DNA of 33,618 nucleotides from Octopus sinensis (taxonomy: Eukaryota): positions 1-33,618 of the forward strand of contig NW_021831718.1 in the NCBI RefSeq assembly GCF_006345805.1. The letters are read 5' to 3'. The translations under genes were made by a program, and so were the position numbers. Under the pieces are notes generated by a model, which had not been told where the DNA came from, made no database searches, and saw only the letters and a program-made list of their open reading frames with translations. Numbering within the stretch: position 1 is the stretch's first letter; every line of letters begins with the position of its first letter. Shown in pieces: positions 904-22,337 of the stretch.

Positions 904-1480
904 TCACCATCCATTAATTTTTTCCTCATGATTTATATTTTCATTATTTTTATCTTTAATGTTTCCGCCATTGTCCATCTCTTCTATTGTATCATTTTCT
1001 GCATATTCATATGCAAGAAATTCTTCAATATCCAACGGATCAAAAATATCTGTCCTTTCTATTGGTATACTATTATTATTTAGAATTAAGAAACAATTTG
1101 AAATGGTATGTTGCGATACATCTTTCCATGCCATTTTAACAAATATCACAACATTCTTTAATGTGAGCTTTCTACATGAACTATAAACAAATATTTCTTG
1201 ATGTTCTAACAAATCCGTTAAATATGCAAGTTTGTGCTTATTGAAATGCGTTTTGAAATTTTTTATAACTCCCAGGTCCATTGACTGGACCAAGCCTGTA
1301 GTATTTCGCGGTATAAACATGATTTCAATATTAGACAAATTTTCTGGTATGTAATGGGAAGGACAGTTATCCAAAATAAGCAAAATTTGTTTTCTCTAAT
1401 TTTAAATTCAAATCAAAGTTTAGAGCTATAAAATTTGTGGCCAATTTGAGAATTCCTCAATTCCCCATTTAGCCTAATTT
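904..1480 (-). mobile_element. pogo/Tigger DDE_1 transposase fragment (C-terminal half)
   Basis: ORF 904-1383 has LILDNCPSH...LVQSMDLGVIKNFK...AWKDVSQHTISNCF, with 30 residues between the 2nd and 3rd catalytic Asp. Upstream frames are broken. Confidence 0.85.
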
Positions 1481-1814: not shown

Positions 1815-3177
1815 CTAACGAATATCCGCAGACGGATGGAGATCAAAATACTCTGCAGTCGTCATAGATTGGCTGTCTGCTTTTTTATCCGTCCCACTGT
1901 CACTATCAATTCGAATTCGCTTCGAAGTTGAATATAACGGCTTCACTCTCTACAAAAATTCACAAAATCACTACAACCTTTGCCTGTTTTTTGCCAGTCT
2001 TTACATTTGAGGCCAACAAACCCCTCAGAGCCTCATAATTTGGTTTTTCGTCATATTCAAGAGCAGCAACCTGCTCAACAAATCCCAAAAGTCCAGGTGG
2101 TGGTTTAGAAGTAGAAAAACACGTTTTTATAAACTTTTTTGGGTTTTTTAAATGTCTAAATAATAATTATATTCCTGTGATACTCGTCTTTTAATTTGGC
2201 GACAGAACTCGCGTCTGATGTGACGGCATCCCACGGAAGAAAACCACACAACCAGCGAATAAGACAAAATACAAGTATTTCAAAGTCTCCTCTCCTCGAA
2301 GGATCAGCACCCATGTGTGAATCTCTGCTGGTGAACTCGATAGTTCCATTATGACACTTTTTTGGCTTTGGAGTATATTTTTTATGAACTCCATTGGCAG
2401 TATACCGATATGACAATCCAAAATCTGCCAAAACATACTAAATCAATTCACCCACACCAACAAACCCTATCTCTGAAGTTTTTTGCTAAAGAACTCAGCA
2501 AATTGGAAGCTTTGATGTCAGCATGGACATACTCATGTTCGTGTAAGTATTCCAAAGCGTTAACCTGCAGTAATAAAATGAAAAATTAACAATGTCAATA
2601 GAAATCTGATATGCCTCATTGACGGTGAGTTTATAATTCTTGCAGGACATGATCTTTGATTGAAGGTCATCTCCAAATCTGTCCATAACAAGAAACCGAT
2701 ATTTTCTTCCTCCATAATTATGAAGTCCAAATCCGACATAACGCGGGAGACCAATAAAGGATAAATTGTGATCAATACACCACTTACTCACTATTTTAAA
2801 TTAAATTCGACTTTATACAATTGTTTTCGTTTAATGCTCGAATATAAACTTGTTTTTCACAGAAGAGAGGACCGCTTTCGTTGGCTTCCAATTTAATGAC
2901 ATATTTCGCTTGAGAATACGAATTGTTAAGCAATCCGACATTCATATGAGCTAATATAATTATTGATTTATTTAAAAATAAATTATATGTTTGTGATATT
3001 TTATGGTTAACCTGTATGGATAAATCCAAACCCGCCTTTTGCAAAAAGAGGGCCAAGACACCAGCTCACATTAGAAGCGTCGGTAAGGATCTCTCCTATT
3101 TCCATTTCATCAACTGACTTATCAACTATAAAGGCATTATTTTTAATATAAATACCTTTTCTTTTAGAACGAGGCAT
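1815..3177 (-). CDS. VRK1: vaccinia-related kinase (VRK1/ballchen-like), about 7 introns, mostly 26-30 nt
   Basis: The spliced product has [86 protein letters not shown] and YDEKPNY, which are VRK-specific CK1-group motifs. The exact last exon is uncertain. Confidence 0.9.
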
Positions 3178-6470: not shown

Positions 6471-7589
6471 ATGGCCATTCAATGTTCTCTCACATGTGTG
6501 TCCTTGTTTTTCTTTATATGTATTTTGTTTTTTTAAATAAATATAGTTTTGGCTATAATTATAGAGATTTCCGATTTTCAGTTATTCTCAGCTAATGAGA
6601 TAACCCAAGCCATTGAGTATAGCCGTTGGCTAATAGGCATGGAAAACTGTCATAATGGATGGACCAAGGCCAATATAACTGGACTTAACGAGTTTATGTC
6701 TTCCAATTTGTTTGGCCAGCCATTTGTACATTCCATCGTAATAAGATCACTCCACAATCATTTATTGGATTTAACATCACAAAAACCTCTTGTTTTATCA
6801 TTCCACGGACCTACAGGAACAGGGAAAAATTTTGTTGCCAAAAACATTGCAAAATATGTAATGGGAAAAAATAAAAGCAGATTTGTACATACTTTTATAT
6901 CAACATTGCATTTTCCGAGTCAAAATTTGATTGAGGAATACAAATCTCAGTTGGCTGCTTGGATTACTGGGAATCTCACTATTTGTCCTTATTCAATTTT
7001 TATTTTTGACGAAATTGAACGAATGCCGCCAACATTGTTAGATTCGGTTACGGGATTTATGGATTATTCTGGAGTTGTTAATAATGTCGACTATGGAAAG
7101 GCAATTTATTTACTTTTAAGGTTTTAATTTACAATAAAAACTTTCAAAAGCAATTCTGGGTCAGGCTTTATCATAAATCGGACCGTTGAACTGTTTATTC
7201 AAGGATATAGTCGAAATTCAATCAAATTTTCTCAAATTGAGAACTTTGTAATGTCCACAATTTATAACGAAAATAGTATTTGTTTGTTTTTGTATATTCT
7301 AGGCGGATATAAGCATAGTTTGTTGATCCAGAAGGCAGTTGTGAGTCACTTTGTTCCATTTTTGCCACTTGAACGTTCCCAATTAGAGGATTGTGCAAGA
7401 CGGGAAATTGAACTAAGTGGTTTAGTGATCTCTTTTGAGAAAGTTGAGGAGATTGTTGGGTCGGTTATAAATCATATGAGTTTTTATCCTCCGAATATGC
7501 CATTTTTCTCAAAAAGTGGATGCAAACGTATTAAGGAAAAGGTGTATTTACATTTTGAATTGGATGGTGGATATGATTTGGATATATAA
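6471..7589 (+). CDS. TOR1: torsin AAA+ ATPase (TOR1A/B-like), 3 short introns
   Basis: Hydrophobic N-terminus, NLFGQ, KPLVLSFHGPTGTGKNFV (torsin Walker A GKN), TLHFP, SIFIFDEIERM (Walker B), FVPFLPLER and SKSGCK (sensor-2). Confidence 0.92.
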
Positions 7590-8149: not shown

Positions 8150-8452
8150 CTGTATTATCAGAGTGGCCGCGAACGTTTGTGTCTTAATAAATTGACAGGT
8201 TTTAATGAATTGTTTCCAAGTAAACATCGCACAACATACACTGCGCCTTATCCACATTGTCTGTTCCAAAAGATTTGGTGAATCCATATTGCATATATGA
8301 GTCATCCCATTTACGCGTTTTATTAACCATAACGAAAAACAAATGAACCATGCTATCAAAATCGATTAAATTATTAAAATCATCTTAATAATAACAAATT
8401 AAAAAATGTTCCGCGTACCCCTAGGGACATGTACCCCCGTTTAAGAAACCTG
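8150..8452 (-). mobile_element. hAT (Buster/Charlie/ZBED5-like) transposon 5' end with TIR and zinc-finger start
   Basis: The minus strand begins CAGGTTTCTTAAACGGGGGTACATGTCCCTAGGGGTAC, then encodes MVNKTRKWDDSYMQYGFT...DKAQCMLC...KPVNLLRH (frameshifted). Confidence 0.7.
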
Positions 8453-8662: not shown

Positions 8663-11516
8663 ATGGGAAAATCTTCTAAAGATAGACGAGACATATATTA
8701 GATTTGCCAAAGAACAAGCATGGAGAGCGAGAAGTGCCTTTAAGCTCATACAAGTAGATGATCATTCAATCTTCTTAACAGTAATCTTACTCATAACAAA
8801 TCAGATTGCAAGTACGTCGTGGATCTCTGTGCCGCACCAGGAAGCTGGACCCAAGTAATAACAAAACGACTGCGGTACAATAATTTAACTATCTCAGAGA
8901 CATACACAATGACTCCAATCAGTTCAAAGTAGTGTCAGTGGACGTTCAGGAGATACAGCCACTGCAAGATGCTATTACACTGCAATGTGACATTACAGAT
9001 GTTTATACAGTAGACTATCCATTTAACGAAAAAAAATTTAACGAAAATATTCATTTTACGAAAATCAAAATATTTTTTTACGTTGTTCCTTAGATAAATT
9101 CAAAAATAAAATTTTTTTTCTTTGTATTAGTGAATATTTAAATATATTTAACGAATATTTAAATAACGAAAATTAAAATTTTTGATAAAATTTTAAAATA
9201 ATTTTTCCTCGCTATTTCTTTGTAGTAAACCATGTGTGCAAGGGTGAACAATGAAGAAAAAAAGAAAAACTTATCAAATTCAACAAAAACTGGAAGTTAT
9301 TGATTTCAAGAAAAATAATCCTGATGTTACTCAAGAAAATTTGGCTCAGCGGTTTAATATGCCTATTGGAGTGATCAATTCAACGTTGAAGAAAATGCAA
9401 TTGTATGGATCAAGGCGTCACAAACAAAAAAAGAATATTACATTTAAAAGTTGTACTGATAAGATATATGACCATGGATTCAGAACAAACGTTTCTGTAA
9501 TCACACCATAACTAATGAAATGGTACGCGAAATGGCACTCAAAATTGCTCAACGATTTTATATTGAAAATTTCAAAGCATCTCACCCATGGATTTCACGC
9601 TTTAAGGAAGAGTATAAAATAAAAACACTCACGATTTCTGGAGAACAATTAGTGGATCCCGTTTTGCTTATAGATTCATATGAACGCTTTGCAGCCATGT
9701 TAAAAAATATGGATCGAAAAATTTTTACAACTGCGATGAAACTGCCCTTTTTTTCAAATGTACTCCAAAAAAACATTAGTTCTTGACTCCGAATCAAGGG
9801 CTTCAGGAAAATTTTTTAAAGAACGAATAACACTGTTATTATGCACAAATATGGAAGGAGATAAAGAGCATCCGTTGGTAATCGGAAAATTCAAAAATCC
9901 TCATGGTTTTAAAAATATTAATATGAATAATCTTGGGATTCAATATGCAAATAGCAATAAATCTTGGATGACCAGTTAATTTTTAAAAACTGGGTTGAAC
10001 GGTTAAATTCCAAAATGAGTGTGGAAAATAGAAAGATTTTGCTTCTTTTAGATAATGCGCCAGTTCACTATTTTGATGGCGAATTCAGTAATATCGAATT
10101 GTATTTTCTTCTTCCAAAGACAACATCTAAGATTCAACCAATTGATCAAGGGATTGTGCATTCATTTAAATTGTTGTATAAAAAAGGAATCACTAGAAAT
10201 TTGAGTATGGGAACAAATATAGGAACATTGTCATATACAGATGAACTTACCAAATTCAAATTAGTGAATGCTCTACCTTTAATTATTGAGGCTTGGAACG
10301 AAGTCACAGTGGACACTATCAAAAATTGCTTTAACAAGGCATATAATTTGTTTAGTGAATCATTTTTCAACTGAAAGAAAAAAAAATTAAATAATTGGGC
10401 GAAGATCGATGAAAAAATACTTGAAGAATCCACTGACGAAAAAGGTATTAAATTTAAATCACCTTACAATTAAAGATAATAAAAGTGAAATTATGATTGA
10501 GTTTCCTGTCTGTGCACCTGTCGTCTGCGAAGAAAACGCGTATCTTGATACAATACAATGTGAGGAAGAAAATGAGCATGAAGAAATAGATAGCACAAAT
10601 GACAATCCCATTGGTTATGCAGATGCACTTAAATATTTGGAAAATATTGAAAAATATTTTTTGCAAGAATCTGGTGAACATATTCACCTAATTACAAATT
10701 TGAGAAATATATTGGCAAAAATTAAAAAGAAGGAACCTAAAATTACCGATTACATGACACATTTTTAATTAAACAATTTTTTTCGTTAAATTCATTTAAC
10801 GAATGCTCAATTTTCATTTTCGTTAAATGAATAGTCTACTGTATTTATTTTAATACTGTTAGAGCAAAACAGTCGATTTGATTATTCAGAATTTGGATGG
10901 AAATTTGGCCGACCTCGTTGTATGTGATGGAGCCCCCGATGGTTGTCCGTTTATTATTTTATTTAGTCACGGGACTGCATGACATGGACGAGTACATGCA
11001 AGCTCAACTTGTGCTTTCAGTAAGTTTATTAATATTTTTACAAGGCACTTAAAATATCCGTTAAATTGTTGAAGAAAGGAGGGTCTTTTATGTCTAAAGT
11101 GAGAAATTCAAATTGTTCTTAGATTTTTCGAGCTAAAAATTCTGATCTACTATTTTCCCAATTGAGATTGTTTTTTGAGGACCTTTCTGTTGCTAAGCCT
11201 GCCAGCAGTCGAAATTCGAGTGCAGAAGCGTTTGTAGTTTGCAGAGGATTTTGTGGCGCGGAAAAGGCACCAGAAAATTCATTTTTATTGTTTAAACATC
11301 AAAATTCTTTCCGTCCAGAATTTCTTTTTTGTGGAGATCTGAATTCATTGGATTCAGATAAAACTTATATGTTAGAAGTAGTATTTATACTTTCATTAAT
11401 GTCAGTTTGGAGAGGAGGAGTATGTATACCGCGAACCTATTCAGCCTCCTATTAATCCACCATATAAGGAGGCTTGTCAACTTAAAAAATGTGATAAACC
11501 AAGTCGTTTTTTATGA
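8663..11516 (+). CDS. FTSJ1: tRNA (cytidine32/guanosine34-2'-O)-methyltransferase FTSJ1/TRM7; two frameshifts in exon 1 as assembled
   Basis: MGKSSKDRRDIY, WRARSAFKL, VDLCAAPGSW, VVCDGAPDVTGLHDMDEY, KIFR, KPASSRNSSAEAF and LDSDKTY are present, with the K-D-K-E tetrad intact. Introns: 8781-8804, 8875-8897, 9001-10862, 10942-10966, 11020-11044, 11099-11122, 11378-11405. Confidence 0.92.
9008..10841 (+). mobile_element. full-length pogo/Tigger DNA transposon
   Basis: 25-bp TIRs CAGTAGACTAT(C/T)CATTTAACGAAAA with 1 mismatch; TA duplication at 9006-9007 and 10842-10843; repeated TTTAACGAA subterminal motifs. Confidence 0.95.
9251..10768 (+). pseudogene. Tigger transposase (HTH_psq/CENP-B HTH + DDE_1), split into about 5 frames
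   Basis: KLEVIDF..., FKASHPWISRFK, NCDETALFF, KERITLLLCTNMEG, KSWMT, LLLLDNAPVH, IQPIDQGIV and AWNEVTVDTIKNCF. Confidence 0.9.
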
Positions 11517-11555
11517 TTTTTTAATTAATAAAATTTTTGTATGTTATTTACATAG

Positions 11556-11875
11556 GTAAAATAGTTCATGTACTTGATAGTCGAATCTGGCGATGTTTGA
11601 TAAAGTTATTTAGTTATTTATAGAGGTTTAGATAAATTGGTCGCAAATTTAATGCCAGGAAAATTCCCGGTAATTTTCAAGAACATTTTCCAAAGCTGAT
11701 ACAAGACTTGGTTGCTCCTTCGATTATAGAAGAGAATAAAGTTTTCTCAGAGGTTTTAAGACTGGCTTCTCCGAATGTGCAGTTGTGGACACATTTGACA
11801 TAATAGACAATATTTTGGTGCAGATTGTTGGGCGGAAACATGCTGTGCTGTTCCTATCTCCAAGACGCAGTGAAT
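11556..11875 (+). pseudogene. TYW5: TYW5 (tRNA wybutosine hydroxylase, JmjC) internal fragment
   Basis: ARKIPGNFQEHFPKL...FSEVLRLASPNVQLWTH/DIIDNILVQIVGRKHAVLF.SPR matches TYW5 (PRKDVADIRKQFP...[40 protein letters not shown]). There is an in-frame TAA at 11633-11635 and a 1-nt deletion near 11795. It is truncated by a CRE-like fragment. Confidence 0.75.
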
Positions 11876-11889
11876 TTTTTTAATATCTA

Positions 11890-12660
11890 CCCAAATAACA
11901 ATATATTAATTCAAGGCGATAAATTCGAAAACGCTTTTGTCTTAAATGATTGATCGTTAGTAAATTTCGAAGATGAAAAAAAGTTAATTAGATTAATTTT
12001 CAAAAGGAATTCACATATGGTACATCCCAAACGAGATATTTGGCATTCCGACAAACGTGTCAATCCGCCAGAACGTTTCAAGTCTTCGCAATCAAGCCCC
12101 ATGTGCTCTCAAATAGAAAAAAATTTTCTGAGTTCAGAACTTTTTTAATAATGTCGTTTAACGTTAAGTGCCTGGTAAATCTATCTTCACCCAGTTTGCA
12201 AGAAAAATAATTAAGTCCCTTAAAATCGAAAACTTTCAAACATCGATCGCAACTGAAAAGCAAATTTAGAAATAAAAAGATCGTTGTTGATAAGCTAAAA
12301 GATCAAATGAGCCTTTAGAGACGCGATTTCAATCTTATTGTGTATACAATCAAGCACGACTTTCTTTTCTGTAAGGGCTTTTTTTTGATTCAGCTGGGTA
12401 TATTGGGGAACCAAAATACTTAATTTCTATAACTAAGAGGTCTTTGATGTTTCTCTTTTAGAAGAAAAAGATCTGTTGAAATTGGGAATGTCTGCCGACT
12501 GAGAGAGTTTATTATGGATAATCCTCTAAGGAGTGTCCAAAAACTCTGGATTTTGTGGTTTAATTTATAGTTTGCTCGAGAATTTAATAAAGGAAGAGCT
12601 CGAGAAAGGAAGGGTTTTAACAATAGGGAAAGACTACAAAGGCAAAGCAAAGATTGTACA
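11890..12660 (-). mobile_element. CRE-like RLE retrotransposon 3' fragment (copy B, heavily decayed)
   Basis: CDRC...FSCKLGEDRFTRHLTLNDIIKKVL (zinc knuckle plus RH..LND) followed by GLDCEDLKRSGGLT (degenerate GL.R.DGKRPDG.T). Confidence 0.65.
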
Positions 12661-12772
12661 AATAAGCTTTTGAGTCAGAAGATAGGACGGATTTAACTGA
12701 ATAAGATAGTGAGTGAATTCAATTGACAATAATCCTAACTGATTTTGGAATACGACTTATAATTTTGGCCAA

Positions 12773-13390
12773 ATGCCAGTGCAAAGAAAGGAATATCAAA
12801 AAGTTGTGAATTCCGTCTGTGAGTAGAAAGTTTTAGTCGGGGATAAACATTGGCTATTATTCTTTCAAAAAAACTAAAATGATAGAAATTCCCAAATCGA
12901 CTGTGAGATTTGCGAGAATAAAATTGTTCAAAGACGGCACAAAAATGCGAAAATTAAATATAGATTTTTTTAGCAAAACCGTCGTCAAATCAAAAAACAT
13001 ATTACAATTGATCTCGAGGAATGAACCATCAATTTACGCTGTGTATCTTGCTCAAATAATCGAATTTAAATTTAATGTTGACGTATCTCCCAAACATTTG
13101 GTCCAATACTGAATTCATTTGGGTTATATTTCCGAGTAGCAAAACATAAACTTCTTTTTAGATGGGAAAATATCAAATTCAGATGGTTAATTTCGAGATA
13201 TTTTTCATATAAAGGAGTGAATAATCTTGTAATTATGAATAAAAAATAAACCGTGGGAAATCTTTAAACATTTTATAAAATAATCTTGAGCAATCGGCGT
13301 TAAAAATGGAGTTAAACTCATTTATTTTCAACAAGGAATATTTCATATTAATTTGTTATTAAAATACAAAAAATCTTTTTGTGTCCAGGT
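12773..13390 (+). mobile_element. decayed Tc1/IS630-like transposase relic
   Basis: IPKSTVR (HTH) and ISRNEPSIY...FKFNVDVSPKHL..Y..HLGY resemble the winged-HTH segment. Multiple stops. Confidence 0.35.
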
Positions 13391-13400
13391 AATTAATATA

Positions 13401-14667
13401 CAGTGAATCCTCGAAAATTGGCCAAAATTTTTTGAATTTATTTTTTTAATTAGAAAATAAACTATTTTTTAATGACATGTCTTATAAAATTTACTCGTGG
13501 ACGTTATACTCGCTGACTTTTCATGAAAAAACTCAAATTATAAACTACAAGGTAGAAAATGATAGTGTTTTGTGTCAGCTTTTGGCTGACAGATTCTCAC
13601 ATCTATTCAGCAAGACGATCTCGAGAAAAATGATTAATAATCCACTGCTTAATAAGGATTATTTGATTTGAAAATCTATTAAATTTTTTAAAACTGCTCA
13701 CAAACCTTAATTTCCTATGCTTGAAGAAAAATTGGTAGAATGGATGGATACAATAGAGTCTAAAGATATTAATTGAAAATTAATTTCTAGGCGGTTTTTT
13801 GGAATGATTCCTTAATACCTTGTAAGGCTGCGCATTTTGCCGAAAAGTTAAAACTTGATAATTTTAAAATTTTACCGGATTTTTGGAAAAATTCAAAAAG
13901 AGGTATGATTTTAAAATGCCAAAATTATATCGAGAGATTTGGACTGATAAAGTAGTTGACATTAATTCGTTTCGTCAATTATTTAAAGAAATTGCTAAAT
14001 CTATAATCTGGATGAAACTACAAACTTATTCAGCGAAAAAAATATGCAAAAACCGATTCCAAGGATACAAATATTATATAGACCGTGTGTATATTATGCT
14101 TTGTTCAAATATGACCGGAAATCATAAATAAAAACCAGTTATGATTGGAAAACCGAAAATGCTTAGATGCATTAGAAATGTCAACTATGGATTTCTAGTC
14201 TCATATTATAGCTCACAGAAAGCTTGGATGACTGCATCTATATTTATTGATTGGATTATCAGTTTTGACCTGTAGCTTAAAATTAGAAAGAAAATTTTAT
14301 TTCTAATAGACCACTGTCCTGCACATTGTATCCCTAAAAATTTAATAATTGAACACTATGATAGTGATAATTGAACACTATGATACAAAAATCACATATC
14401 AACTTGATGGAAAAAACATAGAATTTAGATTAACCGGAATAGAAAGGGAACTTGACTATAGTGCAGAAAAAAATGAAAATGATGTTTTGCCCATTACTAC
14501 AATAAAAAAAAGCAAACCTAAAACGGGAAAGTAAAAAGAAATTAGGGATTAAATTTTATTTTAATTAAATTTAAACGTGTCTGTTTTAATTTCTAAAGTA
14601 TTGATTATTTCAAATTGGCCATAAAATTTTCATGTCCTAAAAATAGCCAAATTGCGAGGATTCACTG
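13401..14667 (+). mobile_element. pogo/Tigger element, internally decayed, TIR-bounded
   Basis: TIRs CAGTGAATCCTCGAAAATTGGCCA / CAGTGAATCCTCGCAATTTGGCTA; TA at 13399-13400 and 14668-14669; remnants FPMLEEKLVEW, MLCSNMTG, KAWMTASIF and IDHCPAH. Confidence 0.9.
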
Positions 14668-14884
14668 TATTTTACGTTAAAATACAAAAAACAAAAATAA
14701 ATTTAAATATTAAAAAAATAATGGTATTGAGAGAAAGAATGATTTTAAAACATTAAACTATCATTTTTAAGAAAAAATTTGATTTTTGGCAAATCCAATC
14801 CCTTTTGTGGGGCATTCTAAGTCCTCAAGTAGCAAATAAGACAAAACAAAATATTGACAACAAAAAAAAGAAAAATTTAATTTA

Positions 14885-16856: not shown

Positions 16857-18444
16857 CTAAATGACCTTCTCTAGCCTCATTAAAACCAATAAATTATACT
16901 TTCATGTCTGTAAAGAATAATAAATGCCCAAACAGCCACAACAGATATGACAACAAGCACAATAACACGATCTTGCTTCCGCGACTACAAATAATTCTCA
17001 ATATATACATTTCGTTCCAAATCATCGGTCAATCTTGTATAGTATGAAACATTACTCTCCAATTCAAACAATCTTTTTTGCAACAAATACAAATGATTGT
17101 GCAAAAATCGAACCTTATCCAATTTTAAACTAACAAAACTACTTTATTCATTGTCATTGTATTTTCGTCAGCCAAAGTATCCAGTCTAGCATTCAACTCA
17201 GATATCTTCCGATTATAATATAAACTCATTTCATCCAAATATCTTAAAAATATAATTTATAAATACTTTTCGCTTAAAATTGCAGATTTTTGTAAATCTT
17301 TAATATTTCCGCTTAATTTCAAAAGGGAAGCCATTTCCTTTTGCTGGGAAGTGGACGTGGAATTTTCATTTCGTTTCTTTTCCTCGTCCACTAAGCCTGA
17401 TAATCCCACTTTCGAATCATTTTTATCTTTCGCAGAATGCTTAAAGTCGTCGACTGGACAAAAAACTTGATCTTCCATAAACAAACTCCAAGTTATCAGA
17501 TTTATTCCACCCAAACAATATCCTGAACTTCAAATTTGATAGAAAACCATCAAGGGAATCAATTTCCGTGATTTCTGGGACAGGAGGTGTAACGGAATCA
17601 TGATTATTTGTGTACATAAAAAGCAATTCCTCTTCTGTCAGTCCATAGAACCTAAAATATAATTTTGTAACAAACCGAAAATAAGTCAGAGGGCAGAAAT
17701 GATGCTTTCCTTCATGTTCGACATAGTCAATTCGGATAAATCGAATTAAAAGGTCACTTTCGATCAAAAATTGCCATTCACTAGCCTTTGGAGATTCGGG
17801 TGGAGGGACTGATAACTCTGCAAATGTCCTCCACCCGTCAGTAGGTGGATAACTAATTTAAATAATGTAATAAAATTACTTTTTGTTGTGGATAGCCTAA
17901 TATATTTTGGATGTGACGAAAATAGTTCTAAATTCGCAAATTTGACAGATGTTACATCGATGGAGTCACACAGCTTGATCACAAACCTAAAAAATAATTA
18001 AATATATTAAAAAACCATTTTTTAGCCTCACATGGATTATTTGTATAAAAATCTTTATCATCTGATAGAATTGCCTGTGAATTATGACACTCAGAGTTCG
18101 TTTCGAGTACTTTAGCCCCACAAGAATGTGAAGCGTAGTTTTTATTGATTATATCGTCTTTAAACCCACTTAAATGCCCATTAGTCCCGCCTGAGTATTA
18201 ATAAGTTAATATTTTTTACTATTTGGGTGGTTATTTGTGACATTTGACGGATTGTCATGAGCTTTCCAATCAGAAAATTTCTTTAAATATGTTTCGCTGG
18301 TTATTTCTGTTTTGTTATTTTCATTAGCGTTGTTTATTAAAGAAACACTGTTTTTAGACTATTAATATTATGTGGTTATGATTGAACAATTACATTTTCT
18401 AGTGATACTTTAAATAAGGCAATAATGACCACAACAACAAGCAT
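16857..18444 (-). CDS. SUCO: SUN domain-containing ossification factor / Slp1 (mid-SUN ER membrane protein)
   Basis: Signal peptide, NYASHSCGAKVL, NPCEAKKWFVIKLCDSI, ANLELFSSHPK, HFCPLTYFRFYG, LSEKYLDEMS (coiled coil) and a C-terminal TM helix, with 24-30 nt introns. One frame junction near 17460-17515 is ambiguous. Confidence 0.85.
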
Positions 18445-18614
18445 GCAAAATCGTTATAATTGGAATCAAAAGTTTATTTCATAAATATTATTTTAATAAT
18501 AAGTTGAAATAATTTAACCAGAAAATATTTTTATTTACTTGTTAGTTTATTGTTAATTAGAAACCAATAATGAAGATGTTAGTTTTTTATTAATTAAATT
18601 TTTATAGCTAATCA

Positions 18615-20078
18615 TCAATTTATAACATTCACTCTTCTCCATAAGTGATAGAGGTCATTTCTAATAACTATTTCCATGATCCTAAAGTCGGGAAAAACCT
18701 GATTATAAAATATAGGAGAAACTTTCTTCTTTAACAATATTTTGCATTTTAGTATTTCGCTTCCAATAAAAGATGTGCTATTCGAAAGCCCATACATCAT
18801 TCTACAAATAATAAATTTCTTATTACTGAAGGTCGGGGAAAATGGGTTCAATAGAATCCAAGAATTTTGAATATTCTTGTAACCCCAACATCATAATGGC
18901 CTTGAGATAGTTTAATTGAATATATAAAATGTTTGTCTTTGGGATATGTCTTTTCCATTTATTTAAAGTGAAATTAATTTTATTTACCATTTTACTCGAA
19001 CCACGTTTATTCTCACTAATAAATTATTCGAATATTAAAATAGACATTATATAAATCAAATCTGTGAATTCCAAAATCATTTGAGCTCGTTTTTTGACAT
19101 AATCATCGTCAACCATGTTTAGACAATTATCACATTTGTTAGAATCGTCAACTTTTCCTGTGGAGCATAAAACACAGTTTGTGGATGTTATACGCGCCTC
19201 AAAAGAATCATCCAAACACCGTGGACACTTACAAATAATACCGAAATCCAAAAGAGCCTTTTGTCTAGCAGCTCTATTCCTACACTGATCAATATGACAA
19301 ACAGTAATTTCCTAAATAAATGAATTCTGAAATTAAAACTTCGGAAATTGAAATAAATTTGACAGCGGCCAAAACTAGATTGATTCCACTGTACCGATAT
19401 ATAGAATTCGGGACACAGGATTGTTCAAATTGGCTAAATTATGACGTGATAACAATACTATAAATAAACCCCGACTCCAATAATTGTTCCACTTTCATGT
19501 TTAATGTATACTGCGGAAGCTTGCATTTTTGTGAATATTTCAAAACCAAATGCGGATGGGGGCAATTCAACATACGTGTGGCAATATTTGTAAGCCTCAA
19601 TAAAAATTGGGAGCAATTTTTTCATTAGTTTTTTATCACAATCTTAAATTGTGCATTAGAGTCGATACCCATATGCATATCTTCAAAGCTTTTTCCTGTT
19701 ATTTTGTCGGGAATGTGAAAAAGGCATAAATGTAACTATAATAAGTCAAAAGTTTCAACCTTCACAATGAGATGAAAATACAATCTAATTATATCAAGAG
19801 GAACATATCCTAGTTTAAGTCTTGGACATTCGTATTTGTGCACAGTCCAGGCTTTTCTCTAATTTAATAAAATCAGCAACTTTTAACCTGGCATTCTATA
19901 TTGCAAAATCTAACGGCATTACATCCTGTGCATCTTTTTAATTTTCTATTATTTTAATATAATATAAAAACTCGTTCATCGAAAAGCACCATGAACAACG
20001 TATAGACAAACAATTTATATTCAAAACATGTACAAATGGCGATATTATTTTTACGGTGTCTCCTGGTTTTAAAGCCAT
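18615..20078 (-). CDS. SMYD: SMYD-family SET and MYND domain protein (SMYD2/3-like) with degenerate catalytic motifs
   Basis: MYND CSWC/CTGC/CNIEC/HKYEC, IIGVGVY, EQSCVPN, EEITVCH, post-SET CKCPRC and a helical C-terminal region. About 9 short introns. Confidence 0.88.
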
Positions 20079-20365: not shown

Positions 20366-22337
20366 AAGTTAAGTTAAGCCATATTCAGCTGATTCCGACC
20401 ATTGGCGATTCTGTAAGACAGGTCCCTCCACGAAACTCTATCCCCACCAGCTCTGCTATTTCCGACAAATGATGTCCGGTAAGTTTCACTACTTCAGATG
20501 TCCAGTTTAGTTTCGGTCTACCCTGCTTCCTTTTTCCAGCGAACGAAGACAGCAGGATTCTTTTCCTATACCATACTCCCGAAGCACGTGCCCCAAATAT
20601 GATAATTGTTGCTTCCAAACTTTCGCACAAGCGACAGTGTAGGTTTAATCCTTTCGAGAACAACGACATTTGACACTTTGTCGTACCAATTTGTGTTCAA
20701 AAGTTTGCGCCAGCACCATAATTCCAGTGAGTCCACTCTTTTGCTGTGAGCTTTGGACAGTGTCCAAGATTCACAGCCATAGAGAAAAACGGGAAACACA
20801 ATCGCGTTGACTAGTCCTATCTTTGTCTTGAGAGAAACATCCTTGCTACTCCAGATCCGATTCAGTTTTATCATCGTACTCCTGCACATAGCCATCCGTC
20901 TATTAATTTCTGAGACACAGCCACCATCTCTGGTTATTAGACTTCCAAGAAAGATATAACTTTCAACATGTTCTATTTCTTCGTCGTCGACGATGACACT
21001 AATTTTTCCAGACAGTGAAGTTGTCATTATTTTGGTTTTTTTCACATTTAGGAATAGGCCAAAAGAGGCACTGTTGTCTTTGACTCTCGTAATTAATTGC
21101 CTCAAGCCATCCTCTGTTTCAGACAGCAAAGTAGTATCATCTGCATAACGGAGATTATTTATGTTGAGGCCACCAATTTTGACTCCGATATCATTTTCGC
21201 AATTTAACACCTCCATGACTTTCTCCGTGTAAATATTAAACAGTAGCGACGATAGAATACAGCCTTGTCGGACGCCGCGCCCAATACCGAAACAGTCTGT
21301 GTCTCCATAAGGAGTCCGCACAAAACCCTCTTGGTCAGTATAAAGAGATTTTATTAACGATATGAGATGATGAGGAATTCCAAATTCTTCCAGGACTGAC
21401 CAAAGTTTCACGTGAGATACGCAATCAAAAGCCTTGCGATAGTCAATGAAACACATGAAAAGAGGCTTCTGGGATCCACGGGATTTTTCCAAAATCCATC
21501 GAAGGCTGGAGATGTTATCTCTCGTACCACGACCACGTCTAAAACCAGCTTGATAATTTGAAAGAATCTTTTCTGAGATTGGAGATAGACGTTGTTTTAT
21601 TATCGACAGGAGTATTTTGCTAACATGAGATATGAGAGCAATTGTGCGGTAATTCGAGCAGACTTTGCTGTCGCCCATTTTAGGCAACAGAATAAATATT
21701 CTTCCAATCAGAAGGCCAAATACCAGTTTTCCAAATATTCTTGCAAAGAGTTGTGATTGCTGATAAAGGAATGGCCTTAAGCATCTCGCTTGAAATATCG
21801 TCCGGCCCAGGCGCCTTGTTGCAAGGCAATTCATTCACGGCCCATGTAACATCACTTTCTCGGATATCATCTTCGGGGTTCGGAAAAATAATGAGCGATC
21901 CATGATAAGGTGCTGAAGTTTTGTATTCAGGAGAATAAAGTTCTTCCACGAACTCCCTCCATCTGTTTCGGATGCTGTGACTGCTGAATAACTCTCTGCC
22001 ATCCCTGTCGTTGACTTTTCCTTTCCGAGCAGTAAAAGGAGTATGTGATTTTCTCACTTGTGTAAAAGCATTCCTGAAATGCCCTTTCTTAAAGTCATTC
22101 TCCAACTGAGTGCAACACTTTTGCCAGTACTCATTTTTGTTCTTCCTGACTGCATGACGGAATTTGGCATTTAAAGAGACGACATCCTTTTTCCTGCCAG
22201 TAGCCTTTGCTTCTCTACGACAGAGGGCAATTTTAATAGTATCTTCTGATAGCCAATCGCATTTAGAGTCAGATTTTTTGATGGACAGATGTTTTTCTGC
22301 CGCAGTGTTGATGATCGACTGTTTAAAACGGATGTTG
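20366..22337 (-). mobile_element. 5'-truncated RTE-clade LINE with 10-bp target-site duplication
   Basis: RT motifs KAPGPDDI, NYRTIALISHVSK, QAGFRRGRGTRD, FIDYRKAFD, GVRQGCILS, LRYADDT, YIFLGS and GKRKQGRP; (CTTAA)n-type 3' tail; GATTAGCATA at 20356-20365 and 22338-22347. A few frameshifts. Confidence 0.95.

What the first reader, a model, noticed from the sequence alone, without database searches (positions are those of the whole stretch)
11499..11875. TRM7/FTSJ1 directly followed by TYW5: a tRNA-Phe anticodon-loop gene pair with a possible in-frame fusion splice
Established: TRM7 makes Cm32/Gm34 on tRNA-Phe, which promotes wybutosine formation at G37, and TYW5 hydroxylates the wybutosine intermediate. 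Seen: TYW5 similarity starts about 40 nt after the FTSJ1 stop on the same strand, with no room for its own promoter or first ~55 codons, behind an acceptor (CATAG, 11555). A GT at 11503 in the last FTSJ1 exon spliced to that acceptor (53 nt) would skip the stop and read ...DKPS-KIVHV in frame. I know of no described TRM7-TYW5 fusion or operon-like pair. Caveats: frame agreement has a 1-in-3 chance, an AATAAA lies at 11527, and the TYW5 part now has a stop, deletions and a retroelement truncation, so it may be a relic.
Basis: partly seen in the sequence, partly recalled or inferred. Interest (0 to 1): 0.72.

Follow-up and report, generated by a model that had tools for sequence, protein, structure and literature searches.

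The report
Dead TYW5 fragment behind FTSJ1 gene
A tRNA-methyltransferase gene (FTSJ1/TRM7) is followed by a short, broken leftover of the tRNA hydroxylase gene TYW5; it is a pseudogene relic, not a fusion or operon, and the scaffold is probably from a dicyemid parasite, not the octopus it is filed under.

Summary
The sequence features are real. FTSJ1/TRM7 ends at TGA 11514-11516, with AATAAA at 11527-11532. TYW5-like sequence follows on the same strand. The GT at 11503 and the CATAG acceptor at 11551-11555 exist, and the join is in frame.

The TYW5 part is only a fragment. It covers about 83 of 309 profile positions (window 11627-11881), plus a weak block at 11564-11617. It carries two in-frame stops and two frameshifts. 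It lacks the first ~55 codons, an internal stretch, and the whole C-terminal ~40%, which holds the third iron ligand and the dimerisation helices. None of these missing parts occurs anywhere in the 33.6-kb window.

The proposed 53-nt splice adds 22 codons and then hits TAG. Every other GT..AG pair that skips the stop adds at most 28 codons. Local introns are 23-30 nt. No FtsJ-TYW5 fusion or adjacency turned up in 150 TYW5 representatives, 120 FTSJ1 homologues, three animal FTSJ1 loci or 80 metagenomic TYW5 loci.

"Retroelement truncation" is not supported. FTSJ1 itself has two exon-1 frameshifts and a 1.8-kb pogo element in a 26-nt intron.

The window is contig VCDQ01012183.1 of the Octopus sinensis assembly, but it looks like dicyemid parasite DNA. 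Verdict: an ordinary pseudogene relic, of low interest.

The parts
8663..8874 (+). FTSJ1/TRM7 exon 1 (ATG 8663). Two frameshifts: an extra T or 2-nt loss in (TA)n at ~8699, and a 1-nt loss in a T-run at ~8765-8766. They throw the segment RFAKEQAWRARSAFKLIQVDD, which holds the catalytic Lys motif, out of frame.
   Evidence: Translations. tblastn with Mactra, Capitella and Lottia FTSJ1 shows stops in the ATG frame across this segment.
8898..9000 (+). FTSJ1 exon 2 (intron 1 = 8875-8897, 23 nt)
9005..10844 (+). Pogo/Tigger-like DNA transposon with 28-nt terminal inverted repeats and a TA target duplication. It sits inside FTSJ1 intron 2, which was originally 26 nt and is now 1862 nt (9001-10862). 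Its transposase ORF is broken into four or more pieces.
   Evidence: Inverted repeat I3. Pfam DDE_1 5e-21 and HTH_Tnp_Tc5. Flanks read.
10863..11380 (+). FTSJ1 exons 3-6: 10863-10941, 10967-11019, 11045-11098, 11123-11380. Introns are 25, 25 and 24 nt. All are open, with canonical GT..AG.
   Evidence: Pfam FtsJ 3.6e-50
11406..11516 (+). FTSJ1 last exon, ending ...PPYKEACQLKKCDKPSRFL-TGA. This is the natural C-terminus, as in homologues.
11527..11532 (+). AATAAA, the likely FTSJ1 poly(A) signal, 11 nt after the stop
   Evidence: sequence; function inferred
11503..11555 (+). It is about twice the length of the eight verified introns in the window (23-30 nt). Its product stops after 22 codons.
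11564..11617 (+). Weak TYW5-like block VHVLDSRIWRCLIKLFSY (about TYW5 residues 55-73), in the same frame as the main block
   Evidence: score 33 against shuffles 24.2 +/- 3.4, p~0.02. Not detected by the profile.
11621..11635 (+). Two in-frame stop codons (TAG 11621-23, TAA 11633-35) at the junction where about 25 TYW5 codons are missing
11627..11881 (+). Main TYW5 relic, profile positions 101-183 of 309. It includes the WTH-F-D motif (the first His and the Asp of the Fe(II) triad) and the DNILVQIVGRK strand. It needs frameshift corrections at the T-run 11794-96 and at ~11861-65. A possible weak extension runs to 11950 (GDKF..VLND), followed by TGA at 11951-53.
11951..13393 (.). Unidentified AT-rich DNA that replaces the missing C-terminal ~40% of TYW5. 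It has no Pfam domain in any frame and no repeat elsewhere in the window.
13394..14674 (.). Second pogo-like element (29-nt terminal inverted repeats, 90% complementary). It is the nearest recognisable mobile element downstream.
   Evidence: I5; I1

Best explanation
The 11556-11950 stretch is a non-functional remnant (pseudogene fragment) of a TYW5 (tRNA-yW hydroxylase, JmjC) gene. It lies directly downstream of a TRM7/FTSJ1 gene in what is most likely a dicyemid mesozoan genome.

FTSJ1 ends at its normal stop, 11 nt before an AATAAA; use of that signal is inferred. The TYW5 remnant keeps about 27-33% of the coding sequence. It has lost its first ~55 codons, about 25 internal codons and its last ~115-125 codons through deletions, and it has gained two stops and two frameshifts. 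It therefore makes no hydroxylase, either alone or as a fusion.

The most economical history (inferred) is that TYW5 once sat next to FTSJ1, was inactivated in this reduced parasite genome, and was then eroded by deletions up to the still-needed 3' end of FTSJ1.

Shown: the identity of both sequences, the lesions, the missing parts, and the early stop of every read-through splice. Inferred: decay in place, poly(A) use, and the dicyemid origin.
For: - TYW5 identity: the only PDB hit is human TYW5 3AL5, E=9e-17. The library search gives 386 hits, with the named best hits TYW5.
- Coverage: the profile of 309 positions matches only positions 101-183. tblastn and hmmsearch --max over all six frames of the window find no N- or C-terminal part.
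- Lesions: stops and frameshifts read directly.
- Missing essentials: the alignment shows H-x-D retained, but the region holding the third His and the C-terminal helices is absent. [quoted passage not shown]
- Splicing: every GT..AG pair that skips the stop gives at most 28 codons. Local introns are 23-30 nt.
- FTSJ1 identity and natural C-terminus.
- No fusion or adjacency elsewhere.
- Host: contig VCDQ01012183.1 of the O. sinensis assembly. Ultra-short introns in animals are known only from Dicyema and myxobolids (PMC13644364). D. japonicum was collected from O. sinensis (PMC6736024).
Against: - The retained block is well conserved: all 14 invariant alignment columns are kept. For an old pseudogene this is slightly unexpected and implies recent loss.
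- All four frameshifts (two in FTSJ1, two in the relic) are contractions in T-runs or dinucleotide repeats. Long-read consensus errors look the same, so some lesions may be assembly errors.
- No second dicyemid genome or transcriptome could be searched, so decay in place versus a relocated fragment is not settled.
- The functional link between the two neighbours (both act on the tRNA-Phe anticodon loop) is an unlikely coincidence if taken at face value.
Confidence: 0.85

Rival explanations
1. Functional FTSJ1-TYW5 fusion, or regulated read-through, by splicing 11503 to 11556. This would make a bifunctional tRNA-Phe anticodon-loop enzyme.
For: GT and AG are at the stated positions and the join is in frame with the TYW5-like frame. 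TYW5 domains are often fused to other wybutosine-pathway enzymes in other organisms.
Against: - The fused frame stops after 22 codons, with a second stop 4 codons later.
- A frameshift lies inside the H-x-D motif.
- About 70% of TYW5 is missing, including essential parts.
- The intron would be about twice the local norm.
- AATAAA lies inside the proposed intron.
- Frame agreement has a 1-in-3 chance.
- No FtsJ+Cupin_8 protein occurs among 150 TYW5 and 120 FTSJ1 relatives.
Confidence: 0.02
2. The TYW5 piece is not an in-place relic. It is a gene fragment moved here by duplication, transposon-mediated capture or repair. In that case the adjacency to FTSJ1 is accidental, and an intact TYW5 may exist elsewhere.
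For: - The fragment is short, sharply bounded and internally well conserved.
- The scaffold is packed with pogo, hAT-like and LINE elements.
- The sequence downstream of the fragment is unidentifiable.
- Adjacency is not seen in Capitella, Lottia, Styela or 80 metagenomic loci.
Against: - No terminal repeats, target duplication or transposon protein domain brackets the fragment.
- There is no second copy in the window.
- It has the same strand and collinear block order as a real gene.
Confidence: 0.12
3. Assembly artefact. The scaffold is low-coverage contaminant DNA in a long-read octopus assembly. The frameshifts, and possibly a collapsed join, would then make intact genes look broken.
For: All four frameshifts are contractions in homopolymers or dinucleotide repeats. 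The contig is an unplaced 33.6-kb piece of a foreign organism.
Against: - The torsin gene on the same scaffold is open over about 1 kb with clean tiny introns.
- The two in-frame stops are substitutions, not indels.
- Indel errors cannot remove about 200 codons.
- No TYW5 N- or C-terminal coding sequence exists anywhere on the scaffold.
Confidence: 0.05

Closest known systems
Human TYW5 (C2orf60; PDB 3AL5/3AL6), the JmjC Fe(II)/2-OG tRNA-yW hydroxylase
   Same: It is the best and only PDB match (E=9e-17). The relic retains the FSxVxRxxS...QLWTH-x-D-xxDNxLxQxxGxK core around the first two metal ligands.
   Different: Only about 83-105 of about 315 residues remain. His235-equivalent, the rest of the jellyroll, the C-terminal four-helix-bundle domain and the N-terminal ~55 residues are absent. 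The reading frame is broken.
Unitary or decaying pseudogene fragments in reduced parasite genomes
   Same: Stops, frameshifts and large deletions are present, there is no start codon, and the fragment sits next to retained genes in a repeat-rich region. Dicyema has about 5,000 genes and 49% repeats (PMC6736024).
   Different: There is nothing unusual. The only oddity is that the neighbour acts on the same tRNA anticodon loop.
Multi-domain wybutosine-pathway fusion proteins (TYW4/LCM-Kelch-TYW5, TYW2-TYW5, TYW3-Kelch-TYW2-TYW5)
   Same: They show that TYW5 does get fused to enzymes working on the same nucleotide.
   Different: The partners are TYW2, TYW3 and TYW4, never FtsJ/TRM7. Here there is no continuous ORF.
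TRM7/FTSJ1 tRNA C32/N34 2'-O-methyltransferase
   Same: The upstream gene has a full-length FtsJ domain, SAM motif DLCAAPGSW, the K-D-K-E residues and the FTSJ1-type C-terminal PPYxxACxLKK motif. It is 50-54% identical to animal FTSJ1.
   Different: Two frameshifts in exon 1 and a 1.8-kb pogo element in a normally 26-nt intron. This copy may be recently disabled, or those sites may be mis-assembled.

Membership tests
TYW5 (tRNA-yW hydroxylase, JmjC/Cupin_8) | Sequence matches TYW5 better than other JmjC proteins | tested here: met
   The only PDB hit at E<=1 is 3AL5. The named best library hits are TYW5. Pfam Cupin_8 scores 26.5 bits, just under the 27.4 cut-off, because the piece is short.
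TYW5 (tRNA-yW hydroxylase, JmjC/Cupin_8) | Complete Fe(II) triad His-x-Asp...His (human His160/Asp162/His235) | tested here: not met
   H-x-D is present only after correcting a frameshift inside the motif. The segment holding the distal His is absent from the whole window.
TYW5 (tRNA-yW hydroxylase, JmjC/Cupin_8) | C-terminal helix-bundle dimerisation domain needed for tRNA binding and activity | tested here: not met
   There is no match to profile positions 196-309 in any frame. The requirement comes from PMC3045595.
TYW5 (tRNA-yW hydroxylase, JmjC/Cupin_8) | Uninterrupted ORF with a start codon | tested here: not met
   Two in-frame stops, two frameshifts, and no Met in the main block.
TRM7/FTSJ1 | FtsJ domain, with best hits the tRNA C32/G34 2'-O-methyltransferases rather than FTSJ2/FTSJ3 | tested here: met
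   Pfam FtsJ 3.6e-50 over 181/181 profile positions. The 74 of the best 120 hits that carry a descriptive name are almost all named tRNA (cytidine32/guanosine34-2'-O)-methyltransferase or FTSJ1, and none is named FTSJ2 or FTSJ3.
TRM7/FTSJ1 | Catalytic K-D-K-E and SAM-binding motif present | tested here: met
   SAFK, DLCAAPGSW, CDGAPD, SKIFR and SAEAF were seen in the translation and tblastn alignments. The motif assignment rests on knowledge of RrmJ/FtsJ. The first Lys lies in the frameshifted segment.
TRM7/FTSJ1 | Intact reading frame and spliceable gene | tested here: inconclusive
   Two frameshifts in exon 1 and a pogo element in intron 2. The rest is clean. Real lesions cannot be told from long-read errors without reads.
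Gene fusion (Rosetta-stone) FTSJ1-TYW5 | A single ORF spans both domains after splicing | tested here: not met
   Every stop-skipping GT..AG pair gives at most 28 codons.
Gene fusion (Rosetta-stone) FTSJ1-TYW5 | The same architecture or adjacency recurs in other genomes | tested here: not met
   - 0 of 150 TYW5 representatives carry FtsJ, and 0 of 120 FTSJ1 homologues carry TYW5.
- The neighbours in Capitella, Lottia and Styela are unrelated genes.
- 0 of 80 metagenomic TYW5 loci (525 kb) carry FTSJ1.
- Closely related (dicyemid) genomes could not be searched.
Operon-like polycistron with a downstream trans-splice acceptor | The downstream cistron has its own start codon and open frame after the acceptor | tested here: not met
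   The first ATG after 11555 (11567) opens a 10-codon ORF. The TYW5 frame has no Met.
Operon-like polycistron with a downstream trans-splice acceptor | Spliced-leader trans-splicing exists in the source organism | not tested
   No transcript data were available and no literature check was made.

The most novel reading that the evidence does not exclude
In the dicyemid lineage FTSJ1 and TYW5 were true tandem neighbours and formed a co-regulated tRNA-Phe anticodon-loop module. This parasite is now dismantling the whole circuit. TYW5 is already a stump, and FTSJ1 is freshly hit by two frameshifts and a transposon. That would be an unusual loss of the near-universal Trm7 function in an animal.
Probability: 0.07. 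Interest if true: 0.5.

Novelty: new member of a known kind. Interest (0 to 1): 0.15.

Why it matters
As a fusion or operon it would have been a new link between two steps of tRNA-Phe anticodon-loop maturation, but the evidence does not support that. What remains is modest.

1. There is evidence that a dicyemid-like parasite has lost TYW5, the enzyme that makes OHyW. This fits its reduced gene set.
2. It is a practical warning. Contig VCDQ01012183.1 of the Octopus sinensis assembly looks like parasite DNA. Its public 'torsin-1A-like [Octopus sinensis]' protein is both mis-attributed and a chimera of a torsin and a transposon ORF.
3. It is an example of a 1.8-kb transposon sitting in a 26-nt intron of a genome where introns are almost all under 30 nt. 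That could be used to ask whether such genes are still spliced.

Tried and rejected
- The word-indexed homologue search with the TYW5 fragment found nothing because of a sensitivity limit. It was replaced by the exhaustive representative search.
- I looked for the missing TYW5 N- and C-terminal parts anywhere in the window, using tblastn with 14 TYW5 proteins at word size 2 and a profile with hmmsearch --max on six frames. Nothing was found beyond 11600-11929.
- I tested whether the in-frame stops could lie in a tiny intron.
- I looked for a retroelement or any transposon domain in 11880-13400 (Pfam, six frames, E<=1) and found none. I also looked for terminal repeats or duplicates of the region and found none.
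- Rfam at gathering thresholds and tRNA scans of the window gave no hits.
- I looked for FtsJ-TYW5 fusions or adjacency and found none.
- I considered a ciliate or other protist origin because of the ~25-nt introns. I rejected it because torsin, VRK-like and FTSJ1 are animal-type and standard stop codons are used.
- I considered true octopus origin and rejected it. No cephalopod homologue is closer than any other animal (Argonauta FTSJ1 is 53% identical), and the next-best torsin hit is 49%.
- The dicyemid genome and transcriptome could not be queried with the available collections.
Full report
**1. What the window is**

The window is AT-rich, at 31.5% GC. The torsin ORF at 6549-7127 is 100% identical to NCBI 'torsin-1A-like [Octopus sinensis]'. 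That protein's only contig is 33,618 bp long, exactly the window length. The contig is GCA_006345805.1:VCDQ01012183.1.

The genes on it do not look like octopus genes.
- All eight introns I could verify are 23-30 nt with GT..AG boundaries. Five FTSJ1 introns are 23, 25, 25, 24 and 25 nt. A sixth was 26 nt before a transposon landed in it. Two torsin introns are 30 and 27 nt.
- The next-best torsin hit is only 49% identical.
- The best FTSJ1 hits are 50-54% identical, and no cephalopod is closer than any other animal.

Among animals, introns under 30 nt are reported only for Dicyema japonicum and myxobolid myxozoans (PMC13644364). D. japonicum lives in the renal sacs of, and was collected from, Octopus sinensis. 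Its genome has a mean intron of 38 bp and 49% repeats, including many LINEs (PMC6736024). I therefore read the scaffold as dicyemid DNA carried into the octopus assembly. This is an inference, not proven.

**2. The upstream gene**

On the + strand there is a seven-exon TRM7/FTSJ1 gene:
- exon 1, 8663-8874
- exon 2, 8898-9000
- exon 3, 10863-10941
- exon 4, 10967-11019
- exon 5, 11045-11098
- exon 6, 11123-11380
- exon 7, 11406-11516

The conceptual protein matches Pfam FtsJ over the full profile at 3.6e-50. Its best hits that carry a name are the tRNA C32/G34 2'-O-methyltransferases. It ends ...PPYKEACQLKKCDKPSRFL-TGA (11514-11516), where homologues also approach their C-termini. AATAAA follows at 11527-11532.

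Two things are wrong with this copy.
- Exon 1 has two frameshifts, at ~8699 in a (TA)n run and at ~8765-66 in a T-run. Together they put the conserved segment RFAKEQAWRARSAFKLIQVDD out of frame, with stops in the ATG frame.
- Intron 2, originally 26 nt, holds a 1.84-kb pogo/Tigger-like transposon at 9005-10844. It has 28-nt terminal inverted repeats, a TA duplication, and DDE_1 and HTH_Tnp_Tc5 domains.

The rest of the gene is clean. I cannot tell whether the two frameshifts are recent mutations or long-read consensus errors. The neighbouring torsin gene is open over about 1 kb, which argues against a grossly error-ridden contig.

**3. The TYW5-like sequence**

I translated 11555-11950 with frameshifts bridged and searched the PDB. 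The single hit at E<=1 was human TYW5 (3AL5), at E=9e-17. An exhaustive search of 1.84 billion representatives gave 386 hits at E<=1e-3. The best were 42-53% identical. The named ones are TYW5, for example Ambystoma 'tRNA wybutosine-synthesizing protein 5'. So the fragment does hit TYW5 best, and far above chance.

It is only a fragment.
- A 309-position profile built from 14 TYW5 proteins matches positions 101-183 only, at window 11627-11881. The score is 102.9 bits once two frameshifts are bridged.
- The frameshifts are a one-base contraction of the T-run at 11794-96, inside the WTH-F-D metal-binding motif, and a second shift at about 11861-65.
- Two in-frame stops (TAG 11621-23, TAA 11633-35) lie at the upstream edge.
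In a local alignment, however, VHVLDSRIWRCLIKLFSY (11564-11617) matches TYW5 residues 55-73 of P0205 at 9/18 identities. The score is 33 against 24.2 +/- 3.4 for shuffles, p~0.02 before correcting for three frames. The block is collinear and in the same frame, so it is probably a second remnant separated by a deletion of about 25 codons.
- A weak tail (GDKF..VLND) may extend the relic to 11950.
- Nothing corresponding to TYW5 positions 1-55 or about 196-309 exists anywhere in the window on either strand.

The alignment shows all 14 invariant columns retained within the surviving block, but the part carrying the third metal ligand is gone. For human TYW5, His160/Asp162/His235 bind the metal. 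Deleting the C-terminal helix bundle abolishes dimerisation, tRNA binding and activity (PMC3045595). The fragment therefore cannot encode an active hydroxylase.

**4. The proposed fusion splice**

The joined frame reads KIVHVLDSRIWRCLIKLFSYL and then TAG, which is 22 codons.

I enumerated every GT..AG pair of up to 120 nt that removes the FTSJ1 stop. None adds more than 28 codons, none reaches the JmjC block in frame, and the shortest such intron is 50 nt, against a local norm of 23-30 nt. The AATAAA lies inside the proposed intron.

An operon-like reading fails too. The first ATG after the acceptor opens a 10-codon ORF, and the TYW5 frame has no Met.

**5. Is the pair or fusion seen elsewhere?**

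- None of the best 150 TYW5-like representatives contains an FtsJ domain. None of the best 120 FTSJ1 homologues contains a TYW5 domain.
- The longer TYW5-like proteins are fused instead to other wybutosine enzymes: LCM/TYW4-Kelch, TYW2, and TYW3-Kelch-TYW2. Pathway fusions involving TYW5 are therefore common, but not with TRM7.
- Within 10 kb on either side of FTSJ1 in Capitella, Lottia and Styela, no gene is TYW5 or Cupin_8, and tblastn finds no TYW5 in those loci.
- Eighty metagenomic contigs carrying TYW5 relatives (525 kb) contain no FTSJ1.
- From general knowledge, human FTSJ1 (X chromosome) and TYW5 (chromosome 2) are unlinked.
- Close relatives (other dicyemids, orthonectids) could not be searched.

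**6. What truncates the relic**

All six frames of 11880-13400 lack any Pfam match at E<=1. The region has no terminal repeats and no copy elsewhere in the window. The nearest identifiable elements are a second pogo-like element at 13394-14674 and an RVT_1 reverse-transcriptase ORF at 20566-21834 on the minus strand. The C-terminal part of TYW5 has been deleted or replaced by DNA I cannot identify.

**7. Interpretation**

The best-supported reading is an ordinary pseudogene stump.
- TYW5 was inactivated in a parasite with a strongly reduced gene set.
- It was then eroded by deletions, on the 5' side right up to the poly(A) region of FTSJ1.

The good conservation of the surviving block suggests the loss is not ancient.

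Rivals:
- A relocated or captured gene fragment, about 0.12. It is not excluded, because I could not see the rest of the genome.
- An assembly artefact, about 0.05. The stops and the roughly 200 missing codons cannot be indel errors.
- A functional fusion, about 0.02.

That the neighbour acts on the same anticodon loop (the Trm7-dependent circuit for yW formation, PMC4274638) is a curiosity that I cannot distinguish from coincidence.

**8. Verdict**

- Observation: mostly right.
- Fusion or operon interpretation: not supported.
- Novelty: a new instance of a known kind of thing (a decayed gene fragment).
- Interest: low.

The by-products are arguably more useful than the finding itself. These are the contaminant scaffold, the chimeric public gene model, and the transposon in a tiny intron.

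Noticed in passing
whole window (contig VCDQ01012183.1 of GCA_006345805.1): The scaffold is filed as Octopus sinensis, but it has 23-30-nt introns and no cephalopod-like protein identities. It is most likely DNA of a dicyemid renal-sac parasite (Dicyema) carried into the octopus assembly and its annotation.
   Followed up: partly
window 6549-7589 and 9287-9508: The public protein 'torsin-1A-like [Octopus sinensis]' (P0271, 283 aa) is a chimeric gene model. It joins torsin exons to the helix-turn-helix ORF of the pogo element, and the modelled intron jumps over FTSJ1 exons 1-2. The real torsin gene (6549-7589, two tiny introns) is intact.
   Followed up: yes
window 9001-10862: A 1.84-kb pogo/Tigger-like transposon with a decayed ORF sits in a 26-nt intron of FTSJ1, in a genome where introns are nearly all under 30 nt. 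Whether the gene can still be spliced is an open question.
   Followed up: partly
window 8694-8699 and 8763-8767: There are two frameshifts 67 nt apart in FTSJ1 exon 1. They restore the frame overall but scramble the catalytic-Lys segment. Both are repeat contractions, as are the two frameshifts in the TYW5 relic. They are either recent inactivation or long-read consensus errors.
   Followed up: partly
proteins P0127, P0132, P0164, P0180, P0220, P0238 (library hits): TYW5-type JmjC domains are widely fused to other wybutosine-pathway enzymes: TYW4/LCM-Kelch, TYW2, and a 1627-aa TYW3-Kelch-TYW2-TYW5 protein. P0141 joins pogo DNA-binding domains to a TYW5-like domain and is probably another model chimera.
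   Followed up: partly
window 8202-8351 (- strand): A short ORF, 'WDDSYMQYGFTKSFGTDNVDKAQCMLC', resembles the N-terminal zinc-finger region of hAT/ZBED-type transposases. It lies in a GC-richer patch between torsin and FTSJ1. This was judged by eye only; there was no Pfam hit.
   Followed up: no
window 904-1383 (-), 13394-14674, 20385-22105 (-): Further mobile elements: a second DDE_1 pogo fragment, a pogo-like element with 29-nt inverted repeats, and a LINE-type reverse transcriptase (RVT_1, 1.5e-37) split over three overlapping ORFs.
   Followed up: partly
window 2156-3056 (-) and 17257-19625 (-): There are probable host genes on the minus strand: a VRK-like kinase with tiny introns and a SET/MYND-like gene. 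Both were identified by eye only. The individual ORFs from the kinase region and two from 17257-17767 gave no Pfam hit.
   Followed up: no
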